This document shows, one piece after another, positions 42,581 through 64,000 of a DNA stretch of 64,000 bases. A model generated the notes under the pieces. That model was not told the DNA's origin and did no database searches. It saw only the letters and a list, made by a program, of their open reading frames with translations. The position numbers were made by a program, and so were the translations under genes. Position 1 is the first letter of the stretch. Each line of letters begins with the position of its first letter. The stretch is from positions 148,918-212,917 of the IMG/VR virus record IMGVR_UViG_3300022200_000019, one strand, 5' to 3'.

Positions 42581-43557
42581 TGAAGAATGATGTTTATACA
42601 GATCAGATAATGAATGACCATTTGTCCAGATCTTGGGCGAATGGGTTTAATGCTAAAATAAAAGAAATACTTGCCGGATGGGAAATAGTACAGCCAGAAA
42701 ATGTCAATCATTATTTAATGGCAGTAAAAGATGGTATGACAGTATTTTTGAATATGTTTCATATTCCTGTCAACCCACACAAATACGATATACTAATTTC
42801 GGAAGTGGTAACATCACATCCTAACCAACTGAAACTTTGGCCTGAATTCTACGGTATATATTACCAGGATTTTAGGTACATTAATCGCATCCCTACTAAA
42901 AAACTCAATTGTTTTATACATAGAAGTTGTCCTTTTAGACAAAGTTGGTTTTACCAACTAGTACGCGAAGACATATTAGATAACACATACAGTTCTTTTT
43001 GGTCTCAAAATGTTACCTACGACAACCTAAGCCCAAATGAATTATTTGATCATTACTTTGAACAGAATAAAATATTTGAAGCAGAGCACAACACTATTAG
43101 ATCGCAAATACCGTTTAAAAATTTTGATTGCACACTAGAAGAGGCAATAATAGACAGCGAAAAAAGCCTTGTGATCGAAACCTATTTTGAAGATCCGGAC
43201 ATGGTTTGCTTTACAGAAAAAACAATGCGAGTACTGCAACTACCTAGACCTTGGCTATTGTTTGGTAACCCGGGGTCTGTTGCAAAGTTACGCGAATGGG
43301 GATTTGATGTGTTTGATGACTGGATTGATCACTCTTACGATACAGAATTAGATCCAGTGCGCAGACAACGGTTGATTTTAGATCAAATACATAATACAAT
43401 ACCATACACACAATCACTGCTTAACGATTTTGATCAACGTGCCAAAAATAACCGTAATATATTCAAACAATATCAAGAAAAATTTATAAACAAAAAAGAA
43501 AACACAATTTTGGAGAATTTAAAAGATGAGCTTTGTAGACGCACTACACGATCGTGA
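42580..43557 (+). CDS. Putative glycosyltransferase (GT10-like C-terminus)
   Basis: SLVIETY..FTEKTMR..PWLLFG..LREWGFDVF..IDHSYD. Confidence 0.4.
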   Translation: MKNDVYTDQIMNDHLSRSWANGFNAKIKEILAGWEIVQPENVNHYLMAVKDGMTVFLNMFHIPVNPHKYDILISEVVTSHPNQLKLWPEFYGIYYQDFRYINRIPTKKLNCFIHRSCPFRQSWFYQLVREDILDNTYSSFWSQNVTYDNLSPNELFDHYFEQNKIFEAEHNTIRSQIPFKNFDCTLEEAIIDSEKSLVIETYFEDPDMVCFTEKTMRVLQLPRPWLLFGNPGSVAKLREWGFDVFDDWIDHSYDTELDPVRRQRLILDQIHNTIPYTQSLLNDFDQRAKNNRNIFKQYQEKFINKKENTILENLKDELCRRTTRS

Positions 43558-46204
43558 TCATGACCGCATTCTGGTCGTGGAGCGTGTCAACGGCGAGCGT
43601 GTCTACAATGAGTTTCCTGCTGAGTATGTGTTTTATTATCCAGACCGTCGAGGCAAGTTCACTACAATCTTCGGAAATTCAGTCAGTCGTTTTTCCACAC
43701 GCAATTACAAAGAGTTTCAGAAAGAACTCAAGATGCACTCAGGGCAAGAACTGTTTGAAAGCGATTTCAAACCTGTGTTTCGTTGTTTAGAAAACAACTA
43801 CAAAGGTAAAGATTCGCCCAAACTGCAAACAGCATTTTTCGACATCGAGGTGGATTTTCATCAGGAACGAGGATTTAGTCCACCAGAAGATCCATTCAAC
43901 GCCATTACTGCCATCACGGTATACCTGGACTGGCTTGAGCAGTGTATTACTCTTGCCGTGCCTCCCAAGACCATGTCCATGGATCAAGCCAGACACCAGG
44001 TGCAGGAGTTTGATAACACATTCTTGTTTGAAAAAGAACATGAAATGTTATTGGCATTTTTGGATGTTATTCAGGATGCTGACATACTGAGCGGCTGGAA
44101 CTCAGAAGGTTTCGATATTCCATATACCATTAATCGCATCACACGAATTTTAAGCAAGGACGACACCCGTCGATTTTGTTTATGGGGACAATTGCCCAAA
44201 AAGCGTACATTTGAAAGATACGGCGCAGCGCATGAAACATACGATACTGTTGGCAGAATCCACATGGACTATCTGCAACTGTATCGCAAATATACCTATC
44301 ATGAAATGCATTCGTATTCGTTGGATGCCATTGCTGAATATGAACTGGGTGAGCGCAAGGTACAATACGAAGGCACGCTGGACCAGTTATACAATCAAGA
44401 TTTTCGCAAGTTCATTGATTATAACAGACAGGATACCATGATACTGGGCAGACTTGATGAAAAACTCAAGTTTCTGGATTTAGCCAACGAACTGGCACAT
44501 GCCAACACCGTGTTGCTACAAACAACAATGGGTGCCGTTGCTGTAACAGAACAAGCAATTATTAATGAAGCACATGAACGTGGGCTGATTGTTCCTGATC
44601 GCAAAAAGCACGAACGAGACGATACTCAGGCAGCAGGGGCATATGTGGCTGTGCCTAAAACAGGCATTCATCAATGGGTAGGATCGGTAGACATTAATTC
44701 ACTGTATCCCAGCGTAATTCGTGCGCTGAACATGGCGCCCGAAACCATTGTTGGCCAGCTTCGTCCAATCATGACTGATCAGTTTATCAAAGAACGCATG
44801 GCCAAAAAAATGTCGTTTGCGGCCAGTTGGGAAGGATTGTTTGGTACCATTGAATACACGGCTGTCATGGATCAGCGTGCAGACACAGAAATCACTGTAG
44901 ATTGGGTCAACGGCGAAAGCACTGTACATTCAGCACATGAAATCTGGCACCATGTGTTTAATTCTAACAGTAACTTGTGCTTGAGCGCAAACGGCACAAT
45001 CTTTACATATGAGCGCGAAGGTGTTGTGCCAGGATTACTAAAGCGTTGGTATGCAGAACGTAAAGAGCTTCAGGCAAAGAAGAAAGAAGCAACAACCAAA
45101 GAAGATATTGCTTTCTGGGATAAACGACAACTTGTTAAGAAGATTAACTTGAACTCGTTGTACGGTGCAATTCTTAACCCAGGCTGTAGATTCTTTGATA
45201 AACGCATTGGACAATCAACTACACTGACCGGCCGTGCTATTGCACAACACATGGATGCTTTTATTAATCAAGTACTTACAGGTGAGTATGACCACGTAGG
45301 CGAATGTGTTGTGTATGGCGACACAGACTCGTGTTACTTCAGTGCCTGGCCTGTGATGAAAGGCAGAGTAGAACGTGGAGAAATGGAATGGAACAAGGAC
45401 ATTGCTGTGCAATTATACGATGCAATTGGTGACGAAGTTAATAACAGTTTCCCACCATTTGCATACAGAGCATTTCATTGCCCAGAAGAATACGGAAACA
45501 TTCTTGCATGCGGCCGAGAAGTAGTTGCTGAATCAGGATTGTTTATTACTAAGAAACGCTATGCATTGTTGGTCATTGACAATGAGGGACAACGCCTGGA
45601 CATAGACGGCAAGCCCGGAAAAGTCAAGGCCATGGGCCTGGATCTGAAACGTTCAGATACACCCAAGATTGTACAGGACTTTTTGAGTGATATTTTGCAG
45701 CGTGTACTCAAAGGCGCAAGTCGTGATGACGTGGTCAAACACATACGAGAGTTCAAGATTGATTTTCACGCCAAGCCAGCCTGGGAGAAAGGAACTCCCA
45801 AGCGTGTAAATAATTTGACCAAATATGGTGAACTGGAACGACAAAATCAATCATTCCATAGCCAGAAAGCCAAGGTGACTATCCCTGGGCATGTCAGGGC
45901 TGCACTGAACTGGAATTATTTGCGAAAGATGCACAACGATAATTACAGTATGGCGGTTGTGGATGGTATGAAGACTGTGGTGTGTAAGCTCAAGAGCAAC
46001 CCCCTGGGACTTAACAGCATCGGCTATCCCACTGATGAATCCAGACTTCCTGAATGGTTTAAAGAACTTCCGTTTGATGACGCACTTATGGAGAGCACCA
46101 TCATTGACCAGAAGGTTGACAATCTGTTGGGTGTTCTGGAGTGGGATCTGTTGTCCAGTACCGATACCAGTAACACATTTGAAGATCTGTTTGAGTTTGT
46201 ATGA
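43526..46204 (+). CDS. Family B DNA polymerase
   Basis: Exonuclease FDIE, WNSEGFDIPY, YNRQD; polymerase DINSLYPS, KINLNSLYG, YGDTDS, KKRYA. Confidence 0.97.
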   Translation: MSFVDALHDRDHDRILVVERVNGERVYNEFPAEYVFYYPDRRGKFTTIFGNSVSRFSTRNYKEFQKELKMHSGQELFESDFKPVFRCLENNYKGKDSPKLQTAFFDIEVDFHQERGFSPPEDPFNAITAITVYLDWLEQCITLAVPPKTMSMDQARHQVQEFDNTFLFEKEHEMLLAFLDVIQDADILSGWNSEGFDIPYTINRITRILSKDDTRRFCLWGQLPKKRTFERYGAAHETYDTVGRIHMDYLQLYRKYTYHEMHSYSLDAIAEYELGERKVQYEGTLDQLYNQDFRKFIDYNRQDTMILGRLDEKLKFLDLANELAHANTVLLQTTMGAVAVTEQAIINEAHERGLIVPDRKKHERDDTQAAGAYVAVPKTGIHQWVGSVDINSLYPSVIRALNMAPETIVGQLRPIMTDQFIKERMAKKMSFAASWEGLFGTIEYTAVMDQRADTEITVDWVNGESTVHSAHEIWHHVFNSNSNLCLSANGTIFTYEREGVVPGLLKRWYAERKELQAKKKEATTKEDIAFWDKRQLVKKINLNSLYGAILNPGCRFFDKRIGQSTTLTGRAIAQHMDAFINQVLTGEYDHVGECVVYGDTDSCYFSAWPVMKGRVERGEMEWNKDIAVQLYDAIGDEVNNSFPPFAYRAFHCPEEYGNILACGREVVAESGLFITKKRYALLVIDNEGQRLDIDGKPGKVKAMGLDLKRSDTPKIVQDFLSDILQRVLKGASRDDVVKHIREFKIDFHAKPAWEKGTPKRVNNLTKYGELERQNQSFHSQKAKVTIPGHVRAALNWNYLRKMHNDNYSMAVVDGMKTVVCKLKSNPLGLNSIGYPTDESRLPEWFKELPFDDALMESTIIDQKVDNLLGVLEWDLLSSTDTSNTFEDLFEFV

Positions 46205-47139
46205 ATCTAAGTAAAATTATATCATATAACCGAGGCTTTGACGACGATAACATTGAACCTTTGGATCAGCACATAAAATCTGAACTGAGCAGTTTACAAG
46301 GCAAACTGGAAACCTTGCAAATACAGGATTATTCAGAAATTCTGACAATCAAAGATTCAATTTTATCAGACATGAAAAAACTCAGACATGCACTGGATGA
46401 TTACAAAAACTCATTGCACAATATCATTACACAGCAAGAGCAGGAATATTTTGTTAAGAGTTATAAGATCTATGAAGGCATGTCAAATGACACACCAGAA
46501 TATATCCTGGATCGAACCAATCCCAAAACCATTGATAATTCTGTAGATTTTGCTGATCGTATCAAACTTTACAGCAGTTGGAAAAATGCTGGATTATACA
46601 TACGTCCTGGAAAAAATCTGTACATCAACGAAATGATTGATGCAGATCCGCTTTATGTGGTTGATGAGCATCTGGAATTGTTGGGCCCAGTAAAAAAATT
46701 ATGGACACCAGCATATCAGGCTCGGTTAAGATATAGCATAATCAACGAACAATCAGATCAGATATTTAAGAATCTACCCAAACAACAAATTGGGCTAATT
46801 GTGGCTAGTGACTTTTTTGATTTTAAACCATTCGAGATCATCAAGAAATATCTCAAAGAATTCTGGAATCTGTTAAAACCAGGCGGAGTGGTAATTTTTA
46901 CATACAACAACTGTGATCAGCCAGGAGCAGTCCGCAATGTTGAAAACTTCTTTAACTGTTACACTCCTGGTCGCCTGATCAAAGATTTTGTGGTGGGTCT
47001 GGATTTTGAATTGTTGAATAGCACAGAATCTGCCAGCGGAATCAATTGGTTAGAGATCAAAAAACCCGGTGATTTATCAAGCATGCGTGGTGGTCAAACA
47101 CTGGCGAAAATAATTAAATCCGAACAAGATAAAATCTAA
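46201..47139 (+). CDS. SAM methyltransferase-like protein with N-terminal coiled coil
   Basis: LKPGGVVIFTYN; no canonical GxG motif I seen. Confidence 0.5.
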   Translation: MNLSKIISYNRGFDDDNIEPLDQHIKSELSSLQGKLETLQIQDYSEILTIKDSILSDMKKLRHALDDYKNSLHNIITQQEQEYFVKSYKIYEGMSNDTPEYILDRTNPKTIDNSVDFADRIKLYSSWKNAGLYIRPGKNLYINEMIDADPLYVVDEHLELLGPVKKLWTPAYQARLRYSIINEQSDQIFKNLPKQQIGLIVASDFFDFKPFEIIKKYLKEFWNLLKPGGVVIFTYNNCDQPGAVRNVENFFNCYTPGRLIKDFVVGLDFELLNSTESASGINWLEIKKPGDLSSMRGGQTLAKIIKSEQDKI

Positions 47140-47145
47140 ATATAC

Positions 47146-47174: not shown

Positions 47175-47198
47175 AGTAACACACATAAAAGGAAAAAC

Positions 47199-47930
47199 AT
47201 GAGAGATTATTTATTAGACATTGTTAGTCACACACACGACTTAGGGACCATTGATTTGATCAAAATCACTGGCGATGCCAATCAGACCATTATTGATGGT
47301 ATTGCAAGTAACAAAACTGTGGTTGTCAAGGGTGCTTTCACAGTTCCCAGTGCAGAACTCACAGGCACATTTGGTATGCCCAACTTGAACAATCTGAAGA
47401 CTCTGCTCAACCTGGAAGCATACAAAGAAGATAGCAGCATCACGCTCACGACCATCACAGCTGATGGTCAGACAGTACCAACTGGACTACATTTTGAAAA
47501 CAAGGACGCTGATTTTAAAAACGACTATCGTTTCATGGTCAAAGATGTTGTTGACAATCAACTCAAGTCAGTGCAATTCAAAGGCACGACCTGGGGCGTA
47601 GAATTTAATCCCACCATTGCCAGCACTCAGAGATTGAAGATGATGGCCAGCACCAACAACACTGAAGTGTCATTCCAAACCAAACTGGATGGTGATCGAC
47701 TGATGGTTTATTTTGGTGATCACAGCACACACGCTGGTGAATTTGTGTTCCAGACCGGTGTATCTGGCACACTAAACAAAACACTGAGTTGGCCAACTGA
47801 AGTGGTTATTAAGATTCTTGATCTGGCAGGCGACAAAACCATGCGTATCTCCGATTCAGGAATTGCAGAAATTACTGTAAATTCAGGACTGATTGAATAT
47901 TCCTATCTGATCCCGGCACTTAGCAAATAA
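47199..47930 (+). CDS. Probable DNA polymerase sliding clamp (gp45-like)
   Basis: About 243 aa alpha/beta protein near PolB; FGMPNLNNLKTLL; AAGGA SD before ATG 47199. Confidence 0.55.
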   Translation: MRDYLLDIVSHTHDLGTIDLIKITGDANQTIIDGIASNKTVVVKGAFTVPSAELTGTFGMPNLNNLKTLLNLEAYKEDSSITLTTITADGQTVPTGLHFENKDADFKNDYRFMVKDVVDNQLKSVQFKGTTWGVEFNPTIASTQRLKMMASTNNTEVSFQTKLDGDRLMVYFGDHSTHAGEFVFQTGVSGTLNKTLSWPTEVVIKILDLAGDKTMRISDSGIAEITVNSGLIEYSYLIPALSK

Positions 47931-49459
47931 TGAATAAAGATCTAACATCTGCACAGCAAGACTATGCCATTTATCTGCCGGCTATTAGTGGATTTTATTC
48001 CACATATATTGGCAAACAGCAGTATGGTGAATATGTTCCAGCCAGCAGAATGCCTGCTGGCATTCCAGAAATGGAAATGCTGAACTTTTTTAATCCCAAT
48101 AAAGGACTGTATCAGTATCAGTGGGGATTGTATTCAGCTGGACATGCCAATCTGAAATTAGACAAACACGATCCCAAAGAAGCAATGATCCGTGAACGTG
48201 GTGCACACACCACATTGGTTGCTGACTCAGGTGGATTTCAGATCGCCAAGGGTGTCTGGGAAGGCGAATGGGCTAATCCCAATTGTCCTCGTGCAGAAAA
48301 ATATCGCAGTCAGGTATTGAAATGGTTGTGCGAAATCAGCGATTATTCCATGGTACTGGATATTCCAACGTTTGCCTACCTGGATCCTGAAGCATCAGCC
48401 AAGAATGGTATTCGTAGTTATGATGATGCTGTCAATGCAACCATCTATAATCATGAATATTTCATCAAGAACAGCTACAACGATGCTAAATTCCTGAACG
48501 TGCTTCAGGGCAACAACCATACTGATTCTGATAATTGGTATGAAATCATGAAGCAATATTCAGATCCCAAGAAATACGATAAATTTTTCCGTGGTTGGGC
48601 GTTTGGTGGTGCAAACAAAGCAGATCTTCATCTGTCACTCAAACGCATCGTAACACTGATTCATGACGGTCTTTTGCAAACTGGCATGCATGACTGGATG
48701 CATTTCCTGGGAACTGGTCAGATTGAATGGGCGCCAGTGCTAACTGCAATTCAGAGAGCTGTGCGCAGACATCACAATCCCAACTTTACCATTAGTTTTG
48801 ACTCTGCAAGTCCATTCTTGTCAACTGCAAATGGTCACATATACACACATTCTGCGACACCAGCACACGCACGTTGGTCTCTGAGAACTGATGTTGCCGC
48901 AGACAATAAGAAATACGCATCTGATACCAGAGCATACCGAGATGCAGTTACCAGTGATGGCATTAATCAGTTCTTTGAAGATTCTCCCATCACAGAAAAG
49001 CTAAAGATCAATGATGTGTGTGTTTATGCGCCAGGTGAGTTAAATAAGATTGGCAAAGAAGGTAAAACCAGTTGGGACAGTTTTTCCTATGCTTTGCTCA
49101 TGGGACACAATGTCTGGCATCACATCAACGGAATACAACAAGCAAATCGAATGGCTGACGCAGGTATCTTTGCATCAACGCTGGAAAGCACACTGATTCA
49201 TGATCATTCAAACATTCAGACCATTATTGATAAAATCTTTGCAGAACCTGATTACGACAATCGCATGTCGCTAATTGACCATTACAGTAAATTCTGGGCC
49301 AAATTGCCAGGGTCTTCTGGCATGGGCGGAAGCGAAAAGAAGGTCAAGAATTCAGATACAAACTTTGATAATCATTTTGAAGAAGTCAATAATGAAATTT
49401 CAGTTGATGATTCAGATTTTAATCAACAAAGACTTGACGAACTAGAGGAATCCGTATAA
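47930..49459 (+). CDS. TGT-fold 7-deazaguanine DNA transglycosylase (DpdA-like)
   Basis: VADSGGFQI, MVLDIP, NVLQG, GWAFGG, MHFLG, SFDSASPF; folE/queD/queE nearby. Confidence 0.8.
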   Translation: MNKDLTSAQQDYAIYLPAISGFYSTYIGKQQYGEYVPASRMPAGIPEMEMLNFFNPNKGLYQYQWGLYSAGHANLKLDKHDPKEAMIRERGAHTTLVADSGGFQIAKGVWEGEWANPNCPRAEKYRSQVLKWLCEISDYSMVLDIPTFAYLDPEASAKNGIRSYDDAVNATIYNHEYFIKNSYNDAKFLNVLQGNNHTDSDNWYEIMKQYSDPKKYDKFFRGWAFGGANKADLHLSLKRIVTLIHDGLLQTGMHDWMHFLGTGQIEWAPVLTAIQRAVRRHHNPNFTISFDSASPFLSTANGHIYTHSATPAHARWSLRTDVAADNKKYASDTRAYRDAVTSDGINQFFEDSPITEKLKINDVCVYAPGELNKIGKEGKTSWDSFSYALLMGHNVWHHINGIQQANRMADAGIFASTLESTLIHDHSNIQTIIDKIFAEPDYDNRMSLIDHYSKFWAKLPGSSGMGGSEKKVKNSDTNFDNHFEEVNNEISVDDSDFNQQRLDELEESV

Positions 49460-49460: not shown

Positions 49461-49649
49461 ATGCCTACTGTATCAGAAATACAACGACAATTAACCGCAG
49501 TTAGTAAGAAATTATCAGAAGCAAAAGATACACATCAACAAGACGAACTTCGTAAGAAGAAAACAGCGTTAACATTAGATTTAAGAAGAGCTCAACAACG
49601 AGCATGGAATAACCGCAACGACAACATAGACTGGGGCGATGGATACTAA
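49461..49649 (+). CDS. Small coiled-coil protein
   Basis: 62 aa, in operon order. Confidence 0.5.
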   Translation: MPTVSEIQRQLTAVSKKLSEAKDTHQQDELRKKKTALTLDLRRAQQRAWNNRNDNIDWGDGY

Positions 49650-50145
49650 ATCAGCACACAGCAACTTTAAAGGGCGGTACTTTACTGGTACTGAAGTAGA
49701 ACAAACTGCAATGTATGGTAAGCCTACACTATTTGTAGTAGGCGAGCCAGATTTGGATGGTATTCAAGAACAGCTAGACGCAAATCCTGATATTCAGCAC
49801 GTTCGCTTTGGTGCTAATATGAGTTTTAATGCAAAAAAACTCCATAACTGGGAAGCAGTTATTATGGATTTCTTACGTGAAGAGTATTGGTGTACACTAG
49901 ACTTTGATATCCAATATGTTAATGATATTCTCGAAACCGAAATGGTCGAATGGCATCGTTTCGTTCCAGTGGTATCAGCCAAACTTCCCTATATCGACCA
50001 ACTTGGATATAACGCAGTACTTAAACTTGACGATGCACATTTTAAGGCAACTAACCCCGGAGTCTGGATTCATCGAGTACGAGATTTAATGAACACAGAA
50101 TCATTTACAGATTGGTCTCGGTATGAAGACAATAAGGCACCATGA
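49639..50145 (+). CDS. Hypothetical protein in the dpd cluster
   Basis: 168 aa; FTGTEVE..TLFVVG, ATNPGVW. Confidence 0.65.
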   Translation: MDTKSAHSNFKGRYFTGTEVEQTAMYGKPTLFVVGEPDLDGIQEQLDANPDIQHVRFGANMSFNAKKLHNWEAVIMDFLREEYWCTLDFDIQYVNDILETEMVEWHRFVPVVSAKLPYIDQLGYNAVLKLDDAHFKATNPGVWIHRVRDLMNTESFTDWSRYEDNKAP

Positions 50146-50600
50146 TGGAAGAACAAATTAAACAAGCACAAATAGAAACTGCCAATCGTATTATGGATAA
50201 GGCACCTCGTATGATTTGGGTAACACTTCAAAAAGAAGGTGTGCATCGTTATCCAGGTGCCGATACTGATCCTAAACTCGCAACAGGCGACTGGGATGAT
50301 GTAAGTTTTCTAGGTGTTCCTCACAGACATATCTTTCACTTTAAGGTATGGATTGAAGTATTTCACAATGATCGCGATATTGAGTTTATCCAATTTAAAC
50401 GTTGGATCACTAGACTGTACGATCAAAGTGTGTTACAGTTAGACTATAAATCATGTGAAATGATAGCAGATGATTTATATGCTGAAATCGCTACTAAATA
50501 TCCAGGTCGCGCCGTGTGGATTTCAGTTAGCGAAGATAATGAAAACGGCGCATTTATTCAATATAATACAACTAAACCAGTGAATTCACTGAAAATTTAA
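50142..50600 (+). CDS. QueD-paralogous T-fold protein (DpdL-like)
   Basis: LGVPHRHIF (LxxxHRHxF), EFIQFK, SCEMIA, VSEDNENG. Confidence 0.65.
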   Translation: MMEEQIKQAQIETANRIMDKAPRMIWVTLQKEGVHRYPGADTDPKLATGDWDDVSFLGVPHRHIFHFKVWIEVFHNDRDIEFIQFKRWITRLYDQSVLQLDYKSCEMIADDLYAEIATKYPGRAVWISVSEDNENGAFIQYNTTKPVNSLKI

Positions 50601-50614: not shown

Positions 50615-50827
50615 ATGTCAAATAAGAAGAAGTACAATAACCCTCGTGTTAATCAAATTTTTGATGATCTGGAGGATTATCTTGATTTTTGCCGTGTATA
50701 CGGCTATCGTTTTAATGAAGCAGACTTGTACAATATGCAGTCATATCCGTTCCAGCAGTTCAATAAGAAGCGTAATGGCAAGAATTTTAAGGATCAAGCA
50801 GGTGTTGATCTAGCACGCATGCGTTAA
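50615..50827 (+). CDS. Small hypothetical protein
   Basis: 70 aa; AAGG SD. Confidence 0.6.
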   Translation: MSNKKKYNNPRVNQIFDDLEDYLDFCRVYGYRFNEADLYNMQSYPFQQFNKKRNGKNFKDQAGVDLARMR

Positions 50828-51204
50828 TGTTTTACGTTATTCATAACACAGCAAACCAAGAAGGCGGCGAACACCTGTCACAACAACTTTGCAATTTATA
50901 TGGCGGAGAGAATGTGGCAGATGTTCGCGCTGCCGATACTTCCGTTCCCGATAGTGGCGATGCTGGACACTATTGGACTGCGGCACAGGTATTAATGAAA
51001 TTGTGCGATATGTACGCCGATAATGTTATTACTTCGGATGATACACTTATCTTTACTTGGTTCCATGATCCTAACGCTAGACTCGTTAATGACCTAAATA
51101 TTAGCTATAATGTACAACCCAAGCAGTACTGGTATACATTTGAAGGTACTGGTGTTTGGGAAATAAGCTCACATAAGTTTATGAAACTTGAAGAGTTGGT
51201 GTAG
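50827..51204 (+). CDS. Hypothetical protein
   Basis: 125 aa, coupled to the upstream stop. Confidence 0.5.
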   Translation: MFYVIHNTANQEGGEHLSQQLCNLYGGENVADVRAADTSVPDSGDAGHYWTAAQVLMKLCDMYADNVITSDDTLIFTWFHDPNARLVNDLNISYNVQPKQYWYTFEGTGVWEISSHKFMKLEELV

Positions 51205-51932
51205 TGCGAAAATTAATAATTGCAGGAAGTTCTTGGTCAGCTGGCACTTGGAAATTTGAGGAGCCAAACATCTATGCGCTGGATGAACCAGGTCTACAAT
51301 TACTATCAGAAAAATACAACGTAATTAACCTCAGTCGCGGCAGATCAAGTAACTGGCAATCTCTAAACACAATTATAAATTATTTTAACCATATCAGTGA
51401 CGAGTTGTTCGATGACACAGATGTTTTACTAGGTCAAACAGATATGTTCCTAGACAAAATGAGCAATTTGTTTGATGTTGACTATTCTGATTTATACAAA
51501 AGGGCTGTGGATTTTGAGAATTTTTACTTGTCTGCGGCAGAATTATTTTATTACAAATTGGATGCTATTTCCAAAACTATTAAAAAACCAATCCATATCA
51601 TCGGAGAATCATCTGATGTAGATGTTAATTTGTTGCATTCAATTACAGATAGAGTAAACGTAATATGTAGTAGTTGGGTAAAACTATTTAAAACAGATCA
51701 TCATGAATCGTTGATTCCGTTGGTAATAAATAAAAATTTTCTTCCAACAGCAAAAAAGAACCAACGACTTGATATTGCCATGCAAGGTACTGAGTATTCA
51801 GACTTAAATTTTAAAGAATTTATGAAATTACAAGAATCTGAATATATGGGAAATTTTATCGGTGATTTTCATCCAACGTCAAGTGGACACGACTTAATGT
51901 CCAGAAAAATTTTGTCTTATTTCGATGTTTGA
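51204..51932 (+). CDS. SGNH/GDSL-like hydrolase
   Basis: IAGSSWSAG, NLSRGRSSN, DFHPTSSGH. Confidence 0.55.
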   Translation: MRKLIIAGSSWSAGTWKFEEPNIYALDEPGLQLLSEKYNVINLSRGRSSNWQSLNTIINYFNHISDELFDDTDVLLGQTDMFLDKMSNLFDVDYSDLYKRAVDFENFYLSAAELFYYKLDAISKTIKKPIHIIGESSDVDVNLLHSITDRVNVICSSWVKLFKTDHHESLIPLVINKNFLPTAKKNQRLDIAMQGTEYSDLNFKEFMKLQESEYMGNFIGDFHPTSSGHDLMSRKILSYFDV

Positions 51933-52536
51933 CACAATACTTAAATTTGAAAACGTACTGGCTGAATACACAAATGCTCCGTATGCAGTTATGACTGACT
52001 GCTGCACACATGCAATTGAGTTATGCTTACGATACCAACAAAGTACGGAGCATCTAGATCACGTAGAGTTTACTGCATACACATACCTAAGTGTTCCAAT
52101 GACCATGCATAAGCTCGGAATTAACTATGACCTGCATGATGAATACTGGATCGGCGAATATCCAATTCATGGTACACAAATTTGGGACAGTGCCAGACGT
52201 TTAGAACGCAATATGTACCGCACAGGCACCATGCAGTGTTTGAGTTTTGGTTATTCTAAACCCATTGAAATTGGTCACGGCGGTGCTATACTGTTAGACA
52301 ACGAAGCAGCGTACAATAAACTAATTCGCATGCGCTATGATGGCCGCGACCTAGATATTAGTCCATGGTCGGCGCAGGTAATGTTTGAAGTTGGTTATCA
52401 TTATAGACCAACAGTAGAAGATGCTGAGCGTGGACTAGAATTACTAGAAAAATATAAAAACAAAAACAACACAAATCCTGTATATGTACAATATCCAGAC
52501 TGTAGATCTATTACTATAAATAAAAATGTTACATAA
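51925..52536 (+). CDS. Short DegT/DnrJ-type PLP aminotransferase
   Basis: DCCTHAIELCL, WDSA, SFGYSKP..GGAIL, RMRYDGR, GYHY. Confidence 0.75.
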   Translation: MFDTILKFENVLAEYTNAPYAVMTDCCTHAIELCLRYQQSTEHLDHVEFTAYTYLSVPMTMHKLGINYDLHDEYWIGEYPIHGTQIWDSARRLERNMYRTGTMQCLSFGYSKPIEIGHGGAILLDNEAAYNKLIRMRYDGRDLDISPWSAQVMFEVGYHYRPTVEDAERGLELLEKYKNKNNTNPVYVQYPDCRSITINKNVT

Positions 52537-52550: not shown

Positions 52551-52579
52551 TTGACAACAACGTGTTAATCTTGTATAAT
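52551..52579 (+). promoter_or_regulatory. Consensus sigma70 promoter of folE-queD
   Basis: TTGACA-N17-TATAAT. Confidence 0.85.
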
Positions 52580-52614: not shown

Positions 52615-53295
52615 ATGAGTTTTAATAAAACAAAAACCGATCCTGTTCTGGGTCGTGAAGTTCATGAATGGTTAGTTAAATGCGGGGTCGAAACACCTGT
52701 TGAAGATATGGGCATCGATCGCAAAGACAAAATCGAAATCATTGAAAGACATTTTGCTGAAATTATGCGAACCATGGGGTTGGATCTAACTGATGACAGT
52801 CTGATGGAAACGCCCAAACGTGTCGCGAAAATGTATGTCAACGAAATATTTTGGGGTTTGGACTATGAAGCATTTCCGAAGTGTACTACTGTAGATAACA
52901 AAATGTCATATGATGAAATGGTTATCGAAACTGGTATTAACGTACAGAGCAACTGTGAACACCATTTTGTGGTGATTGATGGTCGAGCAACTGTTGCGTA
53001 TATTCCAGACAAGGTTGTGCTTGGGCTGAGTAAAATGAATCGCATCGTAGAATATTTCAGCAAACGTCCACAAATTCAGGAACGTTTAACTGAGCAAGTT
53101 TATCATGCACTGCAATACATCCTGGGAACAGACAACGTCGCTGTACTAATCGACGCACAACACTATTGCGTCAAGAGTCGTGGCGTTGAGGATGTAGGTT
53201 CTAGTACCATTACCAGCAAACTAGGTGGTGTATTCAAATCAGACCCAAGTGCTCGCGCAGAGTTCTTGGCAATTGCTCGTGATAATTGCAAATAA
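52615..53295 (+). CDS. folE: GTP cyclohydrolase I
   Basis: ETPKRVAKMY, SNCEHHF, GLSKMNR, RPQIQERLT, HYCVKSRG. Confidence 0.95.
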   Translation: MSFNKTKTDPVLGREVHEWLVKCGVETPVEDMGIDRKDKIEIIERHFAEIMRTMGLDLTDDSLMETPKRVAKMYVNEIFWGLDYEAFPKCTTVDNKMSYDEMVIETGINVQSNCEHHFVVIDGRATVAYIPDKVVLGLSKMNRIVEYFSKRPQIQERLTEQVYHALQYILGTDNVAVLIDAQHYCVKSRGVEDVGSSTITSKLGGVFKSDPSARAEFLAIARDNCK

Positions 53296-53305: not shown

Positions 53306-53893
53306 ATGGGCGTTAAGGTAAAATCAACGAAAGTATATAGATACTTGCCTTGTGGTCACGCACAGTTCTTTGATCTGGAACCAGATGGTAGTCCGGGAGA
53401 GTGTGCTAGCGTACACGGATATGATCGTTCAGTAGAACTCACATTTGCTGGTGACATTGACGACATGGGATGGATTGTTCCATTTGGTGAACTCAGTGCC
53501 GTGAAAAAGTTTATTGAATATTACTTTGATCACGTAACTGTGTTACCAGCAAACGATCCACGCTTGGATCAAATTACATCAGAAATGAAACAGCCTGGTG
53601 GTATTCTTGGTACTGTACGTATCCTACCAAGCGGTGTATCAATGGAAATGAGTTCACTATTCATTTGGGAATGGGTTAACCATTATATCTTTGATATCAC
53701 AGATGGTCGTTGCTATGTAGAAGGTGTGCGTGTATACGAACACGATCGCAATGACGCAATGATTGAAGTGGATCGCGAAACTGCTATCAAAGATGCAAGT
53801 AAGAAGATTGCGGCAGGTGAAGAAATCCTTCCACTCATCGACGAATGGTATTGGGAAGCACCCAAAGACGCAGTAGCAAGGATTGAAGGGTGA
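53306..53893 (+). CDS. queD: 6-carboxytetrahydropterin synthase
   Basis: CGHAQ..C..VHGYDR, VPFGEL, YFDH, VYEHDRN; AGGAG SD before ATG 53306. Confidence 0.85.
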   Translation: MGVKVKSTKVYRYLPCGHAQFFDLEPDGSPGECASVHGYDRSVELTFAGDIDDMGWIVPFGELSAVKKFIEYYFDHVTVLPANDPRLDQITSEMKQPGGILGTVRILPSGVSMEMSSLFIWEWVNHYIFDITDGRCYVEGVRVYEHDRNDAMIEVDRETAIKDASKKIAAGEEILPLIDEWYWEAPKDAVARIEG

Positions 53894-54222
53894 AGTTAGG
53901 TGGTTATTTTGATGTAGGCGGCACTGTTGTAAAACAGGATGACCGCTATATTGTTAAAGATAATACAGAACTAAACAACTTAGTTCTTAGTTCTACAAGA
54001 CTTAATCCAAACAAAAGTACTTCTGGACATAAACATGAAGGTCAAGAAGAAGTATATATGTTTATTACTGGTAGCGGCGAAATGGAATTAGACGACGAAA
54101 AGTTTTCTGTCACTGCTGGAGATATTGTTACAATAAAAGATGGAGTATTTCATCGTGTCCACGCTGGGCAGTATGGTTGTTATTTTATTTGTGTATTTGA
54201 TGGTTCAAGTAAACAACGATGA
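53890..54222 (+). CDS. Cupin-domain protein
   Basis: GHKHEGQEEVYMF..G.G, GDIV.IKDGVFHRV. Confidence 0.85.
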   Translation: MKLGGYFDVGGTVVKQDDRYIVKDNTELNNLVLSSTRLNPNKSTSGHKHEGQEEVYMFITGSGEMELDDEKFSVTAGDIVTIKDGVFHRVHAGQYGCYFICVFDGSSKQR

Positions 54223-54524: not shown

Positions 54525-54561
54525 AAAAGCCGCTTGACACAGCGGCTTTTTTATGTATAAT
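54525..54561 (+). promoter_or_regulatory. Terminator hairpin overlapping a sigma70 promoter
   Basis: AAAAGCCGCT-TGACAC-AGCGGCTTTT; TTGACA 54534-54539, N16, TATAAT 54556-54561. Confidence 0.75.
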
Positions 54562-58479: not shown

Positions 58480-58500
58480 TGATCGCATAAATACTACATT

Positions 58501-58785
58501 ATGCGAGCAACAGAATTAATAAGACACGTTCTAGATTTAATTGACAATATTGAGGCAACAAAAGGCCCCGATGTTGCAGTTAGTGTTACTAACATCACAA
58601 AAGAAGAACCCGAACCCGAAGCAGAATACGCAAACGAACCCAACGAACAGTATGCTCCGGTTAGTGCTGTGACTACTGATATGGGCGGCGGACCTAATAA
58701 GCCTAAACATCCTGCGGACCTTAGAGGCGATTCTCAAAGTCTTTATCCTACCATGCAGTATGATCCATACCGAGGACTACGATAA
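58501..58785 (+). CDS. Small late protein with MRATELI leader
   Basis: ATAAATA at 58487-58493. Confidence 0.65.
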   Translation: MRATELIRHVLDLIDNIEATKGPDVAVSVTNITKEEPEPEAEYANEPNEQYAPVSAVTTDMGGGPNKPKHPADLRGDSQSLYPTMQYDPYRGLR

Positions 58786-61771: not shown

Positions 61772-61773
61772 GA

Positions 61774-61803
61774 TTGACATAGAATACAAAAAGGTAGTAT
61801 AAT
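61774..61803 (+). promoter_or_regulatory. sigma70-type promoter
   Basis: TTGACA-N18-TATAAT. Confidence 0.6.
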
Positions 61804-61893
61804 ACGGTATGTTTTTAGGATTACTTACACTACTGCTGATAGCAACAATGTTACTGTTGCTGGAAACATTGGCTGGATTGAACCAGCGCAGGA

Positions 61894-62031
61894 TTAACCT
61901 TCTGCTGCGGGGGTATCTGGAGTTTCTGGTGCCCGATATTCTTCAGGCTTAGGTTCGTTTTTTACAGGCATCCCTGATAAACGTTTAATATCTTTTAGCC
62001 AATCTGCGTAACGATCGTCGTCTTCACTCAT
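61894..62031 (-). CDS. Small acidic/Pro-rich protein (45 aa)
   Basis: MSEDDDRYADWLKDIKRLSGM...PAAEG; ATAAGTA 5 nt upstream. Confidence 0.45.
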   Translation of the reverse strand: MSEDDDRYADWLKDIKRLSGMPVKNEPKPEEYRAPETPDTPAAEG

Positions 62032-62068
62032 AAAAATACTTATCACAGCAAACTGATCTAAATAATTA

Positions 62069-62097
62069 TTGACACATAACTGTTAAAATGTTATAAT
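62069..62097 (+). promoter_or_regulatory. Consensus sigma70 promoter with extended -10
   Basis: TTGACA-N17 (ending TGT)-TATAAT. Confidence 0.85.
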
Positions 62098-62104
62098 TAC
62101 TCAC

Positions 62105-62611
62105 ATGAAAGTAGAAAAAAATAAAGTCTTTTACACTTGGCAAGATGTACAGAGCATGACTCTGGATCTTATTCGCAGCATTGACGCTGCCGAATGGCGC
62201 CCAGATTATGTTGTTGGACTAACACGTGGAGGATTACACGCTGCTAACTTGATTAGTCAATGGTATAATATTCCTATGGAAACATTACGTGTTAGTTTGC
62301 GTGATCACGCTAACACAGAATCTAATGCGTGGATGGCAGAAGATGGTTTACAAACAGGAATGAAAATCCTCATTGTAGATGACATTAATGACTCCGGTGC
62401 TACAATTAACTGGATCAAGGATGATTGGCACTCAAGTGTATACAACGGCAATCGTGAAGCATGGGGCAACAACATTCGTTTTGCTACACTTGTAGACAAT
62501 AGTGCCTCAGATGCAGATGTTGAATATTGTTGTGTAGAAATTAATAAGTTAGATGATCCAGACCTGTGGATCGTCTTCCCTTGGGAAGATTGGTGGTTAA
62601 CACATGAGTGA
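62105..62611 (+). CDS. Type I purine phosphoribosyltransferase (Gpt/Hpt-like)
   Basis: VVGLTRGGL; PRPP loop ILIVDDINDSGAT; WIVFPWE. Confidence 0.9.
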   Translation: MKVEKNKVFYTWQDVQSMTLDLIRSIDAAEWRPDYVVGLTRGGLHAANLISQWYNIPMETLRVSLRDHANTESNAWMAEDGLQTGMKILIVDDINDSGATINWIKDDWHSSVYNGNREAWGNNIRFATLVDNSASDADVEYCCVEINKLDDPDLWIVFPWEDWWLTHE

Positions 62612-62614
62612 CTT

Positions 62615-63328
62615 ATGCTATTACTAGCCGGTTGTAGTTTTATAGCTAATCCAGATCTTCCTGAAGTAGCGTTTGGTCGTGAAGTATGGGATAAAAAGTT
62701 AGTAAGAATAAATGCGTGGGGGGGTGCTGGTAACGCTTTTATATCAAGAGCCGTATTAGATAATCTCGATAAAGTTAACAATGTTCTTATATTGTGGACT
62801 GGTTTTTCTCGTATTGACATTGAACTCCCGGTGGAAATGGTAGATCAAGTTTCGAGTTATTACGAAGGTACACCTATTCATATTACCAATGATACTGTTT
62901 GGCTCCATAGTGGTGGGTTTGATGGAACGTGGTATAATTATAGTCGTACCAAATATGAAAAATACATCTATGAATATATTAAAAGTCAATACTTGCCGTG
63001 CAATTGGAATTACCTGAATAATAAAAATTTACGAATTATTGCCGGAACGTTGAATACTTTAGAACAACTGAATATTGAATACAAGTTTGGATTTATCTAT
63101 GACATTTTTTCAGACCATATCAGCGAACAACAGAGTTTAGGCAGTGCAGTTGATAGAAATAATCCATTGCTTAACTTAATCAATTGGGATAATTGTTTAT
63201 CTGAAACTCCGTACGATTTTTGTAAAGATCGTGGGCTATTGTCCGATGATCGATTCCATCCCACTAGAGAAGGTTATAACCAATGGTGGAATGCAGTAAA
63301 ACAAGATATTACATTTGACTTAACCTAA
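62615..63328 (+). CDS. SGNH/GDSL-like hydrolase
   Basis: LAGCSF, AWGGAGN, DRFHPTREGY. Confidence 0.55.
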   Translation: MLLLAGCSFIANPDLPEVAFGREVWDKKLVRINAWGGAGNAFISRAVLDNLDKVNNVLILWTGFSRIDIELPVEMVDQVSSYYEGTPIHITNDTVWLHSGGFDGTWYNYSRTKYEKYIYEYIKSQYLPCNWNYLNNKNLRIIAGTLNTLEQLNIEYKFGFIYDIFSDHISEQQSLGSAVDRNNPLLNLINWDNCLSETPYDFCKDRGLLSDDRFHPTREGYNQWWNAVKQDITFDLT

Positions 63329-63343
63329 AAAATAAAGTATAAT
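63315..63343 (+). promoter_or_regulatory. sigma70 promoter of queE
   Basis: TTGACT-N17-TATAAT. Confidence 0.8.
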
Positions 63344-63348
63344 TAATT

Positions 63349-64000
63349 ATGAATGAACGTACAATTAAAATAGCAGAAATTTTTTATAGCATACAAGGCG
63401 AAGGAATGTATGCTGGTGTCCCAAGTGTTTTTATTAGAACATTCGGCTGCAATTTTGAATGTAGGTCTTTTGGTTTACCGACCGGGATGATGAGTCAAGA
63501 GCCAGAAAACATTGCGGCAAAAATTGATGAATTTCATAGTTACGAGGAGCTTCCGCTTGCTGAATCAGGCTGCGACAGTTACGCAAGTTGGCATCCTGCT
63601 TTCAAGCATCTTTCACCAAAGATGACTATTTCTAGTATTGTAGACCAAGTGTTAGCATCGATTAATAGAGAACGTATTTACGATCCTGGTGAGAGTTACA
63701 CAGATACGCATATTATTATTACAGGTGGAGAACCACTACTGGGTTGGCAGCGTGCGTATCCAGAACTTATTGATGCGCTATACGCAGAAGGATTCCGCAA
63801 CTTTACATTCGAAACAAACGGCACACAGAAACTTTCTGCAGACTTCAAGGATTATTTGCTAATTAATAATATCAAGAACAAAAAAATTGATCTTACTTTT
63901 AGTGTAAGTGCTAAACTCCCGTGTTCTGGCGAATTGTGGGATAATGCTATTCTTCCTGATGTTGTTACAGAGTACGAACAGTACGGCCGCGCATTTTTAA
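63349..64000 (+). CDS. queE: 7-carboxy-7-deazaguanine synthase (radical SAM), 3'-truncated by window edge
   Basis: Translated by hand: MNERTIKIAEIFYSIQGEG..FIRTFGCNFECRSFG..CDSY..ITGGEPL..FETNGT. Confidence 0.9.
   Translation, partial: MNERTIKIAEIFYSIQGEGMYAGVPSVFIRTFGCNFECRSFGLPTGMMSQEPENIAAKIDEFHSYEELPLAESGCDSYASWHPAFKHLSPKMTISSIVDQVLASINRERIYDPGESYTDTHIIITGGEPLLGWQRAYPELIDALYAEGFRNFTFETNGTQKLSADFKDYLLINNIKNKKIDLTFSVSAKLPCSGELWDNAILPDVVTEYEQYGRAFL

What the first reader, a model, noticed from the sequence alone, without database searches (positions are those of the whole stretch)
43526..64000. Replication-linked 7-deazaguanine pathway of the rarer DpdL type
Seen: PolB, clamp, a long (509-aa) TGT-fold protein, a QueD paralogue with LxxxHRHxF, folE, queD and queE; no queC in this window. 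Established: FolE-QueD-QueE make CDG, DpdA-family enzymes insert deazaguanines into DNA, and DpdL-type proteins are linked to decarboxylation to unsubstituted 7-deazaguanine. Inference: this genome carries dDG or a derivative, installed by a divergent DpdA.
Basis: partly seen in the sequence, partly recalled or inferred. Interest (0 to 1): 0.65.

Follow-up and report, generated by a model that had tools for sequence, protein, structure and literature searches.

The report
Phage 7-deazaguanine DNA-modification gene module
An uncultured freshwater jumbo phage carries, inside its DNA-replication genes, the enzymes to make a 7-deazaguanine base without the usual nitrile step and a very divergent guanine-swapping enzyme, so its DNA guanines are probably replaced by 7-deazaguanine or a close derivative.

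Summary
These are PolB, a gp45/PCNA-like clamp, a 509-aa protein, a DpdL homologue, FolE, QueD and QueE. QueE is cut by the contig end.

- **DpdL.** It carries LGVPHRHIF and is 52% identical to the protein at the ACP17 dpdL locus and 33% to phiST's.
- **QueC and QueF.** Both are absent from the 213-kb contig, which is about 61% complete. QueC is also absent from five large relatives and from the complete PA5oct, ACP17 and phiST genomes.
- **Conservation.** The order PolB–clamp–transglycosylase–p168–DpdL holds in 80 related IMG/VR loci. DpdL follows in 48 of 48 loci with room.
- **Abundance.** The transglycosylase family has at least 7,555 sequence clusters, so it is rare only among cultured phages.
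- **Subfamily.** It is neither DpdA3 nor clearly DpdA2.
- **Experimental proxy.** PA5oct, the nearest cultured relative, has restriction-resistant, G-modified DNA.
- **Unexplained module genes.** These are p168, p70, a half-size DegT and a Gpt-like phosphoribosyltransferase. Most relatives also have a GT4 glycosyltransferase, which is missing here.

dDG is the best guess. The actual base is untested.

The parts
43526..46204 (+). Family B DNA polymerase (892 aa). It heads the replication block that holds the module.
   Evidence: Pfam DNA_pol_B 4e-38 and DNA_pol_B_exo1 3e-21. Found upstream of the transglycosylase in 70 of 70 related loci with room.
46201..47139 (+). 312-aa protein with an N-terminal coiled coil and a weak class-I SAM-methyltransferase-like C-terminal half. 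Role unknown.
   Evidence: Sub-threshold Pfam Methyltransf hits. The profile matches phosphoethanolamine N-methyltransferases at E 7e-5 over about 50 residues. Present in 55 of 80 loci.
47199..47930 (+). Sliding-clamp-like protein (243 aa from the ATG at 47199).
   Evidence: phrog_12062 2e-31, function unknown. Atlas neighbours are PCNA/gp45 sliding-clamp clusters. Present in 80 of 80 loci.
47930..49459 (+). Divergent DpdA-like guanine transglycosylase with a TGT fold (509 aa). Proposed to swap G in phage DNA for the deazapurine base.
49461..49649 (+). 62-aa ORF with no homologue in related loci. It may not be a gene.
   Evidence: 0 tblastn hits in 83 loci.
49639..50145 (+). p168, a conserved protein of unknown function that travels with the transglycosylase.
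50142..50600 (+). DpdL, a QueD paralogue and the proposed 7-carboxy-7-deazaguanine decarboxylase.
   Evidence: Motif LGVPHRHIF. 52% identical to the protein at the ACP17 dpdL locus and 33% to phiST gp040. The motif is conserved across about 70 homologues. Present in 48 of 48 loci with room.
50615..50827 (+). p70, a conserved small protein of unknown function that follows DpdL.
   Evidence: Present in 44 of 48 loci with room. No family hit.
50827..51932 (+). Two lineage-specific ORFs (125 aa and 242 aa). They occupy the place where most relatives have a GT4-like glycosyltransferase.
   Evidence: 0 and 2 homologues in 83 loci. GT4 lies after DpdL-p70 in 46 of 54 loci and is absent from this contig.
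51925..52536 (+). Half-size DegT/DnrJ/EryC1-like, PLP-aminotransferase-like protein (203 aa).
   Evidence: Pfam DegT 2e-13, matching only profile positions about 161-242. Present in 25 of 38 loci with room. The homologue in Flavobacterium phage immuto 2-6A sits in a glycan-synthesis cluster.
52551..52579 (+). Perfect sigma-70 consensus promoter (TTGACA-17-TATAAT), 35 nt ahead of folE.
   Evidence: There are five perfect sites in the window against 0.11 expected.
52615..53295 (+). FolE, GTP cyclohydrolase I.
   Evidence: Pfam 9e-61. phrog_2197 2e-75.
53306..53893 (+). QueD-type 6-carboxytetrahydropterin synthase, with a CxxxHGY motif as in phiST and ACP17 QueD.
   Evidence: Pfam PTPS 1e-13. phrog_2389 1e-26. 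TIGR03367 2e-8. Alignment.
53890..54222 (+). Small cupin (110 aa), probably in one transcription unit with folE-queD. Role unknown.
   Evidence: Pfam Cupin_2 5e-11. Found next to QueD or QueE in 2 of the 3 relatives that have it.
54525..54550 (+). Terminator-like hairpin (10-bp stem plus a T run) that closes the folE-queD-cupin unit.
62069..62097 (+). Perfect sigma-70 consensus promoter immediately ahead of the phosphoribosyltransferase gene.
62105..62611 (+). Gpt-like xanthine/guanine phosphoribosyltransferase.
   Evidence: Pfam Pribosyltran 1e-13. NCBIfam xanthine PRTase 5e-12, below cut-off. Lies in the module in 21 loci and next to QueE in PA5oct.
62615..63328 (+). 237-aa ORF of unknown function between the phosphoribosyltransferase gene and queE.
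   Evidence: No family hit. No homologue in related loci.
63349..63999 (+). QueE, 7-carboxy-7-deazaguanine synthase (radical SAM). The 3' end is missing because the contig ends here.
   Evidence: phrog_2076 8e-36. Five NCBIfam QueE models match at about 1e-12 over the N-terminal part only. Relatives are 280-307 aa.

Best explanation
The region is a DNA-modification module embedded in the replication genes of an uncultured freshwater jumbo phage.

The proposed steps run as follows.

1. FolE, QueD and QueE turn GTP into 7-carboxy-7-deazaguanine (CDG). This chemistry is established for these families. Here it is inferred from homology.
2. There is no QueC or QueF, so the pathway stops short of preQ0 and preQ1. 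Absence is shown for the 213-kb contig and for relatives.
3. DpdL, a QueD paralogue whose catalytic Cys motif has become LxxxHRHxF, converts CDG to unsubstituted 7-deazaguanine. This is a published prediction and is not proven enzymatically.
4. The 509-aa TGT-fold enzyme has an intact general acid/base Asp, base-binding Asp and nucleophile Asp. It excises guanine from newly made phage DNA and inserts the deazapurine after replication. This is inferred.
5. The Gpt-like phosphoribosyltransferase, probably co-transcribed with queE, may recycle the released guanine to GMP and GTP as feedstock. This is an inference only.

The two base-synthesis units each sit behind a perfect host-type promoter. 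The transglycosylase, p168 and DpdL follow the polymerase and clamp genes without one. The outcome would be phage DNA in which G is largely replaced by dDG, protecting it from restriction.
For: - Gene identities.
- TGT fold and catalytic residues.
- QueC absent from the own contig, from five relatives that are 43-76% complete, and from the complete PA5oct, ACP17 and phiST genomes. QueF absent.
- Synteny in 80 IMG/VR loci: DpdL in 48/48, clamp in 80/80, PolB in 70/70.
- The same core genes are clustered in ACP17 and PA5oct.
- phiST has DpdL and lacks QueC, and carries 302,000 dDG per 10^6 nt (PMC10516641).
[quoted passage not shown] It is restricted by nucleases that target modified G (PMC12191111).
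- Perfect promoters lie before folE and before the phosphoribosyltransferase-queE unit.
- The contig encodes only one tRNA, Trp-CCA, and none with a GUN anticodon.
Against: - No chemistry has been measured for this phage or any close relative.
- DpdL activity has never been shown. Co-expressing dpdL and dpdA from phiST or ACP17 in E. coli gave no dDG (PMC10516641).
- The transglycosylase shows no detectable similarity to the phiST DpdA3 that accompanies dDG. It also lacks the CxCxxC zinc motif of TGT and DpdA.
- The module holds conserved genes with no role in this scheme: p168, p70 and mini-DegT. Most relatives also have a GT4 and an epimerase-like gene.
- 39% of the genome is unseen, and queE is truncated.
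Confidence: 0.55

Rival explanations
1. The DNA carries a larger, not yet described 7-deazaguanine derivative rather than plain dDG. Examples would be a sugar- or amino-sugar-bearing form, or a CDG conjugate. It would be built with the extra conserved module genes: p168, p70 and mini-DegT, plus GT4 and an epimerase-like protein in relatives.
For: - GT4 sits inside the module in 46 of 54 related loci. In ACP17 it lies between dpdA and dpdL and overlaps the end of dpdA, and in PA5oct it also lies between them.
- PA5oct also has a short epimerase-like gene in the module.
- Mini-DegT is present in 25 of 38 loci. Its homologue in phage immuto lies in a glycan cluster.
- END nucleases described as sensing hypermodified DNA target PA5oct.
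- The two-gene reconstitution with ACP17 dpdL and dpdA failed.
Against: - This contig lacks both GT4 and the epimerase-like gene.
- Unsubstituted 7-deazaguanine has no obvious handle for a sugar at C7.
- The sugar genes could serve virion or host glycans instead.
- phiST makes plain dDG with DpdL.
Confidence: 0.2
2. The transglycosylase inserts CDG itself, giving dCDG, and DpdL has a different role or acts on DNA-bound CDG.
For: - Cui et al. consider CDG a possible DpdA3 substrate.
- dCDG exists in nature, in STSV-2.
- The function of DpdL is unproven.
Against: - The only DpdL phage analysed, phiST, has dDG and no dCDG.
- DpdL keeps an intact metal-binding His set and is strictly conserved next to the transglycosylase.
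- The published DpdL model favours action on the free base.
Confidence: 0.1
3. The deazapurine enters DNA during replication. The Gpt-like phosphoribosyltransferase would convert the free base to a nucleotide, which is reduced and phosphorylated and then used by the phage PolB. The TGT-fold protein would have another role.
For: - The phosphoribosyltransferase gene sits next to queE behind its own consensus promoter. A homologue lies next to QueE in PA5oct.
- A MazG-like pyrophosphohydrolase lies 4.5 kb upstream of the window.
- The module sits beside PolB and the clamp.
Against: - The transglycosylase keeps every catalytic residue under strong conservation.
- All phages known to carry 7-deazaguanines encode a DpdA.
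- The phosphoribosyltransferase is present near the module in only 21 of the loci.
- No dedicated kinase or dGTP-specific hydrolase was identified.
Confidence: 0.06
4. The TGT-fold enzyme modifies tRNA (queuosine- or archaeosine-like) rather than DNA.
For: The best structural matches are tRNA-guanine transglycosylases. The base-binding position has Gln-Gly as in TGT, not His-Gly as in bacterial DpdA.
Against: - The gene sits among replication genes in more than 80 genomes.
- It co-occurs with DpdL rather than QueC, QueF or QueA.
- No GUN-anticodon tRNA is on the contig.
- PA5oct DNA itself is G-modified.
- No canonical zinc subdomain motif is present.
Confidence: 0.03

Closest known systems
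DpdL-type dDG pathway of Cellulophaga phage phiST (Cui, Hutinet et al., NAR 2023, PMC10516641)
   Same: It has FolE, QueD (with the same CxxxHGY variant), QueE and DpdL with LxxxHRHxF. It has no QueC. A TGT-superfamily transglycosylase lies next to DpdL, and the genes lie beside the DNA polymerase.
   Different: - The phiST transglycosylase is DpdA3, 259 aa, and shows no detectable similarity to the 509-aa protein here.
- phiST has a MazG-like gene and a P-loop ATPase in its cluster, and no p168, p70, phosphoribosyltransferase or mini-DegT homologue.
- DpdL is only 33% identical.
- phiST is a 78-kb phage with a Pol III alpha polymerase, not a jumbo phage with PolB.
Pseudomonas jumbo phage PA5oct (Wroclawvirus) module EST35_0311-0322
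   Same: The order is PolB, clamp-like protein, a 540-aa homologue of the transglycosylase (38% identity), DpdL (60%), a phosphoribosyltransferase homologue and QueE. There is no QueC. A p168 homologue is encoded elsewhere in the genome. Its DNA is experimentally G-modified.
   Different: PA5oct has a GT4-like glycosyltransferase between the transglycosylase and DpdL, and a short epimerase-like gene. Both are absent from this contig. Its p168 homologue is 27 kb away. It has no mini-DegT. The chemical nature of its modification is unpublished in the papers held here.
Acidovorax phage ACP17 dpdA-dpdL cluster
   Same: The order is PolB, QueD, FolE, p168 homologue, DpdA, GT4, DpdL (52% identical) and QueE, tightly packed within the replication genes. 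There is no QueC.
   Different: ACP17 DpdA (424 aa) belongs with the Vibrio phage nt-1/VH7D type, which is DpdA2. It is only marginally similar to the protein here (E 1.7e-4, probability 49%). It has a GT4, which is absent here.
Bacterial and archaeal tRNA-guanine transglycosylases and bacterial DpdA (PDB 7UI4)
   Same: It has the TIM-barrel TGT fold, a DSGGF motif with the general acid/base Asp, a base-binding Asp, a Gly-Gly loop and a nucleophile Asp.
   Different: There is no Pfam TGT hit and no match to any PADLOC model at the thresholds used. There is no CxCxxC...H zinc motif. About 90 extra N-terminal residues and about 90 poorly modelled C-terminal residues are present. No DpdB-like ATPase partner was identified.

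Membership tests
TGT/DpdA transglycosylase superfamily | TGT-type TIM-barrel fold | tested here: met
TGT/DpdA transglycosylase superfamily | Three invariant aspartates: the general acid/base Asp in DSGGF, the base-binding Asp and the nucleophile Asp | tested here: met
   D99 (DSGGFQ), D144 and D291 are invariant in 25 homologues that are 55-85% identical. So are Q193-G194, and G226-G227 are nearly so. hhalign aligns these blocks with the GR7B and ACP17 proteins. Mapping onto TGT D102/D156/D280 rests on motif order, not on a printed residue-level superposition.
TGT/DpdA transglycosylase superfamily | Structural zinc site (CxCxxC...H) | tested here: not met
   Only one nearly invariant Cys (C364) and no CxCxxC motif appear in the 25-sequence alignment. 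An alternative metal site cannot be excluded.
TGT/DpdA transglycosylase superfamily | Match to the curated sequence models (Pfam PF01702 TGT, PADLOC models) | tested here: not met
   No hit even at E<=10 in Pfam. No hit in NCBIfam. No relevant hit in PADLOC. The six-frame PF01702 scan of the contig was blank. The profile against PDB sequences was also blank. Only a transitive link exists, through the GR7B protein, which has a sub-threshold TGT hit.
TGT/DpdA transglycosylase superfamily | Acts on DNA rather than tRNA | not testable with these tools
   Only indirect evidence exists: the replication-gene context, no GUN tRNA on the contig and G-modified PA5oct DNA.
DpdA3 subfamily (phiST, Campylobacter phages) | Sequence similarity to phiST CGPG_00065/gp042 | tested here: not met
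   BLASTP E 0.026. hhalign probability 1.4%.
DpdA2-type (ACP17, Vibrio nt-1/VH7D) | Sequence similarity to ACP17 DpdA, which itself matches the nt-1/VH7D proteins at 1e-38 | tested here: inconclusive
   BLASTP E 8e-4 over 213 residues. hhalign E 1.7e-4, probability 49%. ACP17 is linked to nt-1/VH7D. DpdA1 and DpdA4 were not tested.
DpdL (proposed CDG decarboxylase) | LxxxHRHxF in place of the QueD motif CxxxHGH | tested here: met
   LGVPHRHIF at residues 57-65. The pattern L-x-x-x-H-R-H-x-F holds in nearly all of about 70 homologues. H35, H61, H63, H75, E81, E106 and E131 are invariant or nearly so.
DpdL (proposed CDG decarboxylase) | Homology to the founding members (phiST CGPG_00067, ACP17 DpdL) | tested here: met
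   tblastn 52% identity, E 4e-34, to the ACP17 locus. 33% identity, E 1e-8, to the phiST locus (loci).
DpdL (proposed CDG decarboxylase) | Paralogue of QueD (T-fold) | tested here: inconclusive
   No Pfam PTPS hit. hhalign of the DpdL profile against the phage QueD profile gives probability 65% and E 6e-5, over the C-terminal 68 columns only. Cui et al. report HHpred 99.9% for the phiST member.
DpdL (proposed CDG decarboxylase) | Genomic signature: FolE, QueD, QueE and a DpdA, but no QueC | tested here: met
   Caveat: the contig is 61% complete.
DpdL (proposed CDG decarboxylase) | Decarboxylates CDG to 7-deazaguanine | not testable with these tools
   This is also unproven in the literature.
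QueE (CDG synthase, radical SAM) | Radical-SAM cluster cysteines and the QueE N-terminal QGEG motif | tested here: met
   SIQGEG is present. Cys-x3-Cys is followed about 36 residues later by the conserved Cys of a CDxY block. All three Cys are invariant in 14 homologues. PHROG QueE-like 8e-36. NCBIfam scores are far below the cut-offs. The gene is 3'-truncated.

The most novel reading that the evidence does not exclude
This large jumbo-phage clade, together with PA5oct and ACP17, makes a 7-deazaguanine DNA hypermodification that has not been described. It would be installed by an unnamed long DpdA subfamily and would need extra conserved factors: p168 and p70, plus GT4, an epimerase-like protein and mini-DegT sugar enzymes in most members. 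That would explain why the published two-gene reconstitutions with dpdL and dpdA failed.
Probability: 0.2. Interest if true: 0.8.

Novelty: new variant of a known kind. Interest (0 to 1): 0.5.

Why it matters
7-Deazaguanine DNA modifications protect phages from restriction enzymes and, in vitro, from Cas9. They also interfere with sequencing and cloning.

This window shows that the QueC-less, DpdL-type route is not an oddity of a few cultured phages. It is paired here with a third transglycosylase lineage that curated models do not recognise. That lineage has at least 7,555 sequence clusters and hundreds of IMG/VR loci, always in the same replication-gene slot.

The finding gives a defined gene set for solving two open problems: what DpdL does, and why the published reconstitutions failed. 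It also points to a cultured, genetically tractable proxy, PA5oct, whose modified G has not been chemically identified in the literature searched here.

Tried and rejected
- **Megablast of 11 kb against the phage collection.** No match.
- **Profile of the 509-aa family against PDB sequences.** Nothing. Only the fold comparison revealed TGT.
- **p168.**
  - No hit in Pfam, NCBIfam or PHROGs, and the Atlas was uninformative.
  - Foldseek gave no hit at E<=0.001.
  - hhalign of p168 against QueE profiles gave nothing, so I do not claim a QueE relationship.
  - The PA5oct gene EST35_0320 is not a p168 homologue. It is epimerase-like.
- **Complex prediction of the transglycosylase with p168.** No verdict, score 0.00. 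This is not evidence either way.
- **The two 'SGNH-like' ORFs (51204-51932 and 62615-63328).** They share only a short FHPT motif and are not significantly similar, so I dropped the paralogue and SGNH idea.
- **The window cupin against the phiST cupin.** Unrelated.
- **ORFs downstream of QueE in ten relatives.** They match nothing on this contig. They are 2OG-Fe(II) oxygenase-like, DUF805 and FEN/RNase H types, not QueC.
- **Sequencing runs.** Only assembled contigs of freshwater metagenomes hold the phage, with no raw or nanopore reads. No modification signal could be sought, and read laying was not used.
- **The large representative-protein search.** Not run. The fold and family question was already settled without it.

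Full report
**Origin of the sequence**

The window is the last 64 kb of a 212,917-bp linear IMG/VR virus contig that CheckV rates 61% complete. The phage therefore probably has a genome of roughly 350 kb. Close homologues of its proteins sit on contigs of up to 350 kb. Near-identical DNA is held by freshwater metagenome runs from at least four studies. All genes discussed are on the + strand. Only table 11 was used.

**Check of the observation**

- **PolB (43526-46204).** It has clear Pfam polymerase and exonuclease domains.
- **Clamp.** The 243-aa protein from the ATG at 47199 has no Pfam hit. Its Atlas neighbours are PCNA/gp45 sliding-clamp clusters, and its Atlas model matches a gp45-slide_C cluster at TM 0.60/0.73. 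'Clamp' is moderately supported.
- **The 509-aa protein (47930-49459).** It is invisible to Pfam, PHROGs, NCBIfam and PADLOC.
  - A 25-sequence alignment gave a confident model, pLDDT 86 and pTM 0.86.
  - The 50 best Foldseek matches in the PDB are all tRNA-guanine or archaeosine transglycosylases.
  - The sequence carries DSGGFQ, identical to the TGT active-site motif.
  - D99, D144, Q193-G194 and D291 are invariant, and G226-G227 nearly so, across homologues that are only 55-85% identical.
  - These correspond to the general acid/base Asp, the base-binding Asp and the nucleophile Asp that define TGT and DpdA (PMC10164549).
  - The canonical CxCxxC zinc motif is not present.
- **DpdL (50142-50600).** It contains LGVPHRHIF.
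  - tblastn finds the ACP17 locus at 52% identity and the phiST locus at 33%. By position these are the dpdL genes described by Cui et al..
  - The motif holds in nearly all of about 70 homologues.
- **FolE, QueD and QueE.** All are confirmed.
  - QueE lacks about 70-90 C-terminal residues because the contig ends there.
  - QueD has CxxxHGY rather than CxxxHGH, and so do the QueDs of phiST and ACP17.
- **QueC and QueF.** Neither is found anywhere in the 213-kb contig.

**Conservation and spread**

The transglycosylase has at least 7,555 homologous 90%-identity clusters. At least 598 IMG/VR stretches encode a relative.

| Gene | Position relative to the transglycosylase | Loci with it / loci with room (of 80 fetched) |
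|---|---|---|
| PolB | upstream | 70/70 |
| Clamp | upstream | 80/80 |
| p168 | downstream | 62/63 |
| DpdL | downstream | 48/48 |
| p70 | downstream | 44/48 |
| FolE | downstream | 33/38 |

QueD and QueE follow where the fetched flank reaches them. QueC is absent from five large related contigs that are 43-76% complete. It is also absent from the complete genomes of PA5oct, ACP17 and phiST.

Among cultured phages the same core occurs in the PA5oct group and in Sinorhizobium phage Phosso. So the DpdL type is rare among isolates, at 28 of 50,697 records, but not in nature.

DpdL is found with three different transglycosylase lineages.

- **DpdA3 in phiST.**
- **A DpdA2-type enzyme in ACP17, BUCT-ZZ01 and X1.** ACP17 DpdA matches the Vibrio nt-1/VH7D proteins at 1e-38.
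- **The long type seen here.**

The long type is not detectably similar to phiST DpdA3. It is marginally similar to ACP17 DpdA (E 1.7e-4). It is clearly related (probability 93%) to 'TGT domain' proteins of other jumbo phages such as Vibrio phage GR7B. I did not test DpdA1 or DpdA4.

**Mechanism**

The best-supported reading is the published DpdL scheme (PMC10516641).

1. GTP is converted to CDG by FolE, QueD and QueE.
2. DpdL decarboxylates CDG to 7-deazaguanine.
3. The transglycosylase exchanges G in DNA for that base.

What is shown here is gene identity, active-site conservation, the absence of QueC and QueF, and strict co-occurrence. The enzyme activities and the identity of the product are inferred.

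Independent experimental support comes from PA5oct. Its DNA resists five restriction enzymes in a pattern the authors attribute to modified G. It is also restricted by nucleases that target phages with modified G (PMC12191111). The phiST genome carries 302,000 dDG per 10^6 nt.

'Replication-linked' is true as gene neighbourhood. The transglycosylase chemistry argues for exchange after synthesis.

**Transcription signals**

The window holds five perfect TTGACA-N16-18-TATAAT sites, against 0.11 expected.

- One lies 35 nt before folE and is followed by a good ribosome-binding site.
- One lies immediately before the phosphoribosyltransferase-queE unit.
- A strong hairpin terminator closes the folE-queD-cupin unit.

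The base-synthesis genes thus look like separately promoted units that the host polymerase could read. The transglycosylase, p168 and DpdL follow the polymerase and clamp genes with overlapping or abutting reading frames. This ties the Gpt-like phosphoribosyltransferase to the pathway. Recycling of released guanine into GTP is my preferred role for it, but that is only an inference.

**What does not fit the simple scheme**

- **p168.** It is as tightly linked to the transglycosylase as DpdL is. It lies directly upstream of dpdA in the unrelated phage ACP17. Its confident model has no convincing fold match.
- **p70.** It is similarly conserved.
- **GT4.** A GT4-like glycosyltransferase lies in the module in 46 of 54 relatives. 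It lies between dpdA and dpdL in ACP17 and PA5oct.
- **Epimerase-like gene.** PA5oct adds a short one.
- **Mini-DegT.** Many relatives, and this window, have a half-size DegT-like protein. Its homologue in phage immuto 2-6A sits in a glycan-synthesis cluster.
- **This contig.** It lacks GT4 and the epimerase-like gene. Two ORFs without relatives sit in the GT4 position.

These genes may serve another process. Alternatively, the clade may elaborate the base beyond dDG. They are also candidates for the 'other unknown enzymes' that Cui et al. invoked when dpdL plus dpdA gave no dDG in E. coli.

**Verdict**

The system is a new variant of a known kind. It has the known DpdL-type precursor pathway, joined to an unnamed and very abundant long DpdA-like lineage and to several conserved genes of unknown role.

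- Probability that the DNA carries a 7-deazaguanine derivative: about 0.85.
- Probability that it is plain dDG made and inserted as described: about 0.55.

Noticed in passing
window 31250-31277 (-), 52551-52579, 54534-54561, 61774-61803, 62069-62097 (+): There are five perfect sigma-70 consensus promoters (TTGACA-N16-18-TATAAT) where 0.11 are expected by chance. This suggests heavy use of the host RNA polymerase for selected units. Two of them precede the deazaguanine precursor genes.
   Followed up: partly
related loci L004-L083; L001:10608-11669; L002:7969-8997: A GT4-like glycosyltransferase sits inside the DpdA-DpdL module in 46 of 54 relatives and in ACP17 and PA5oct. It is absent from this 213-kb contig. 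PA5oct also has a short NAD-epimerase-like gene there (L001:12407-12925).
   Followed up: partly
window 51925-52536: This is a half-size DegT/DnrJ/EryC1-like protein of 203 aa. It keeps an SxxK lysine block (SFGYSK) that I read from its sequence as PLP-binding-like, an identification not checked against a DegT alignment, but lacks about 70 internal residues and the C-terminal domain. It is conserved at 51-65% identity in relatives. Homologues occur in Flavobacterium phage immuto 2-6A (in a glycan cluster) and Synechococcus phage S-SCSM2R.
   Followed up: partly
window 63349-63999 and alignment A3: QueE has an unusual radical-SAM cluster spacing. Cys-x3-Cys is followed about 36 residues later by the third conserved Cys, in a CDxY block. 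The insertion falls between the second and third cysteines.
   Followed up: no
window 53306-53893; L002, L003 QueD: The QueD of this phage, phiST, ACP17 and all relatives has CxxxHGY instead of the canonical CxxxHGH. The second motif histidine, a zinc ligand in QueD according to Cui et al., is replaced by Tyr.
   Followed up: partly
window 54610-61771: A 1289-aa subtilase-domain protein, a protein with an N-terminal ubiquitin-like hit and a C-terminal LamG/ConA-like domain, and a 627-aa virion structural protein (phrog_1645) are wedged between the two halves of the pathway.
   Followed up: no
window 15218-17536: This is a 772-aa ClpA/ClpB-like two-AAA+ 'ATP-dependent protease' (phrog_4871, E 1e-234).
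   Followed up: no
window 31593-36968: Four tandem paralogous genes of 438-477 aa share weak hits to phrog_28193 and phrog_17056, both of unknown function.
   Followed up: no
G000:C1:144388-144591 (4.5 kb upstream of the window): A MazG-like NTP pyrophosphohydrolase (141-aa ORF, Pfam 2e-9) lies here. phiST has a MazG-like gene next to its DpdL.
   Followed up: no
G000:C1:133281-133354: The only tRNA gene on the 213-kb contig is tRNA-Trp (CCA).
   Followed up: no
window 61809-61952: A 47-codon ORF encodes a strongly hydrophobic peptide directly after the consensus promoter at 61774. It is not in the ORF list because of its size.
   Followed up: no
window 46201-47139: A conserved 312-aa protein lies between PolB and the clamp, in 55 of 80 loci. 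It has an N-terminal coiled coil and a weak SAM-methyltransferase-like C-terminal half. I could not find the usual glycine-rich SAM motif by eye.
   Followed up: partly
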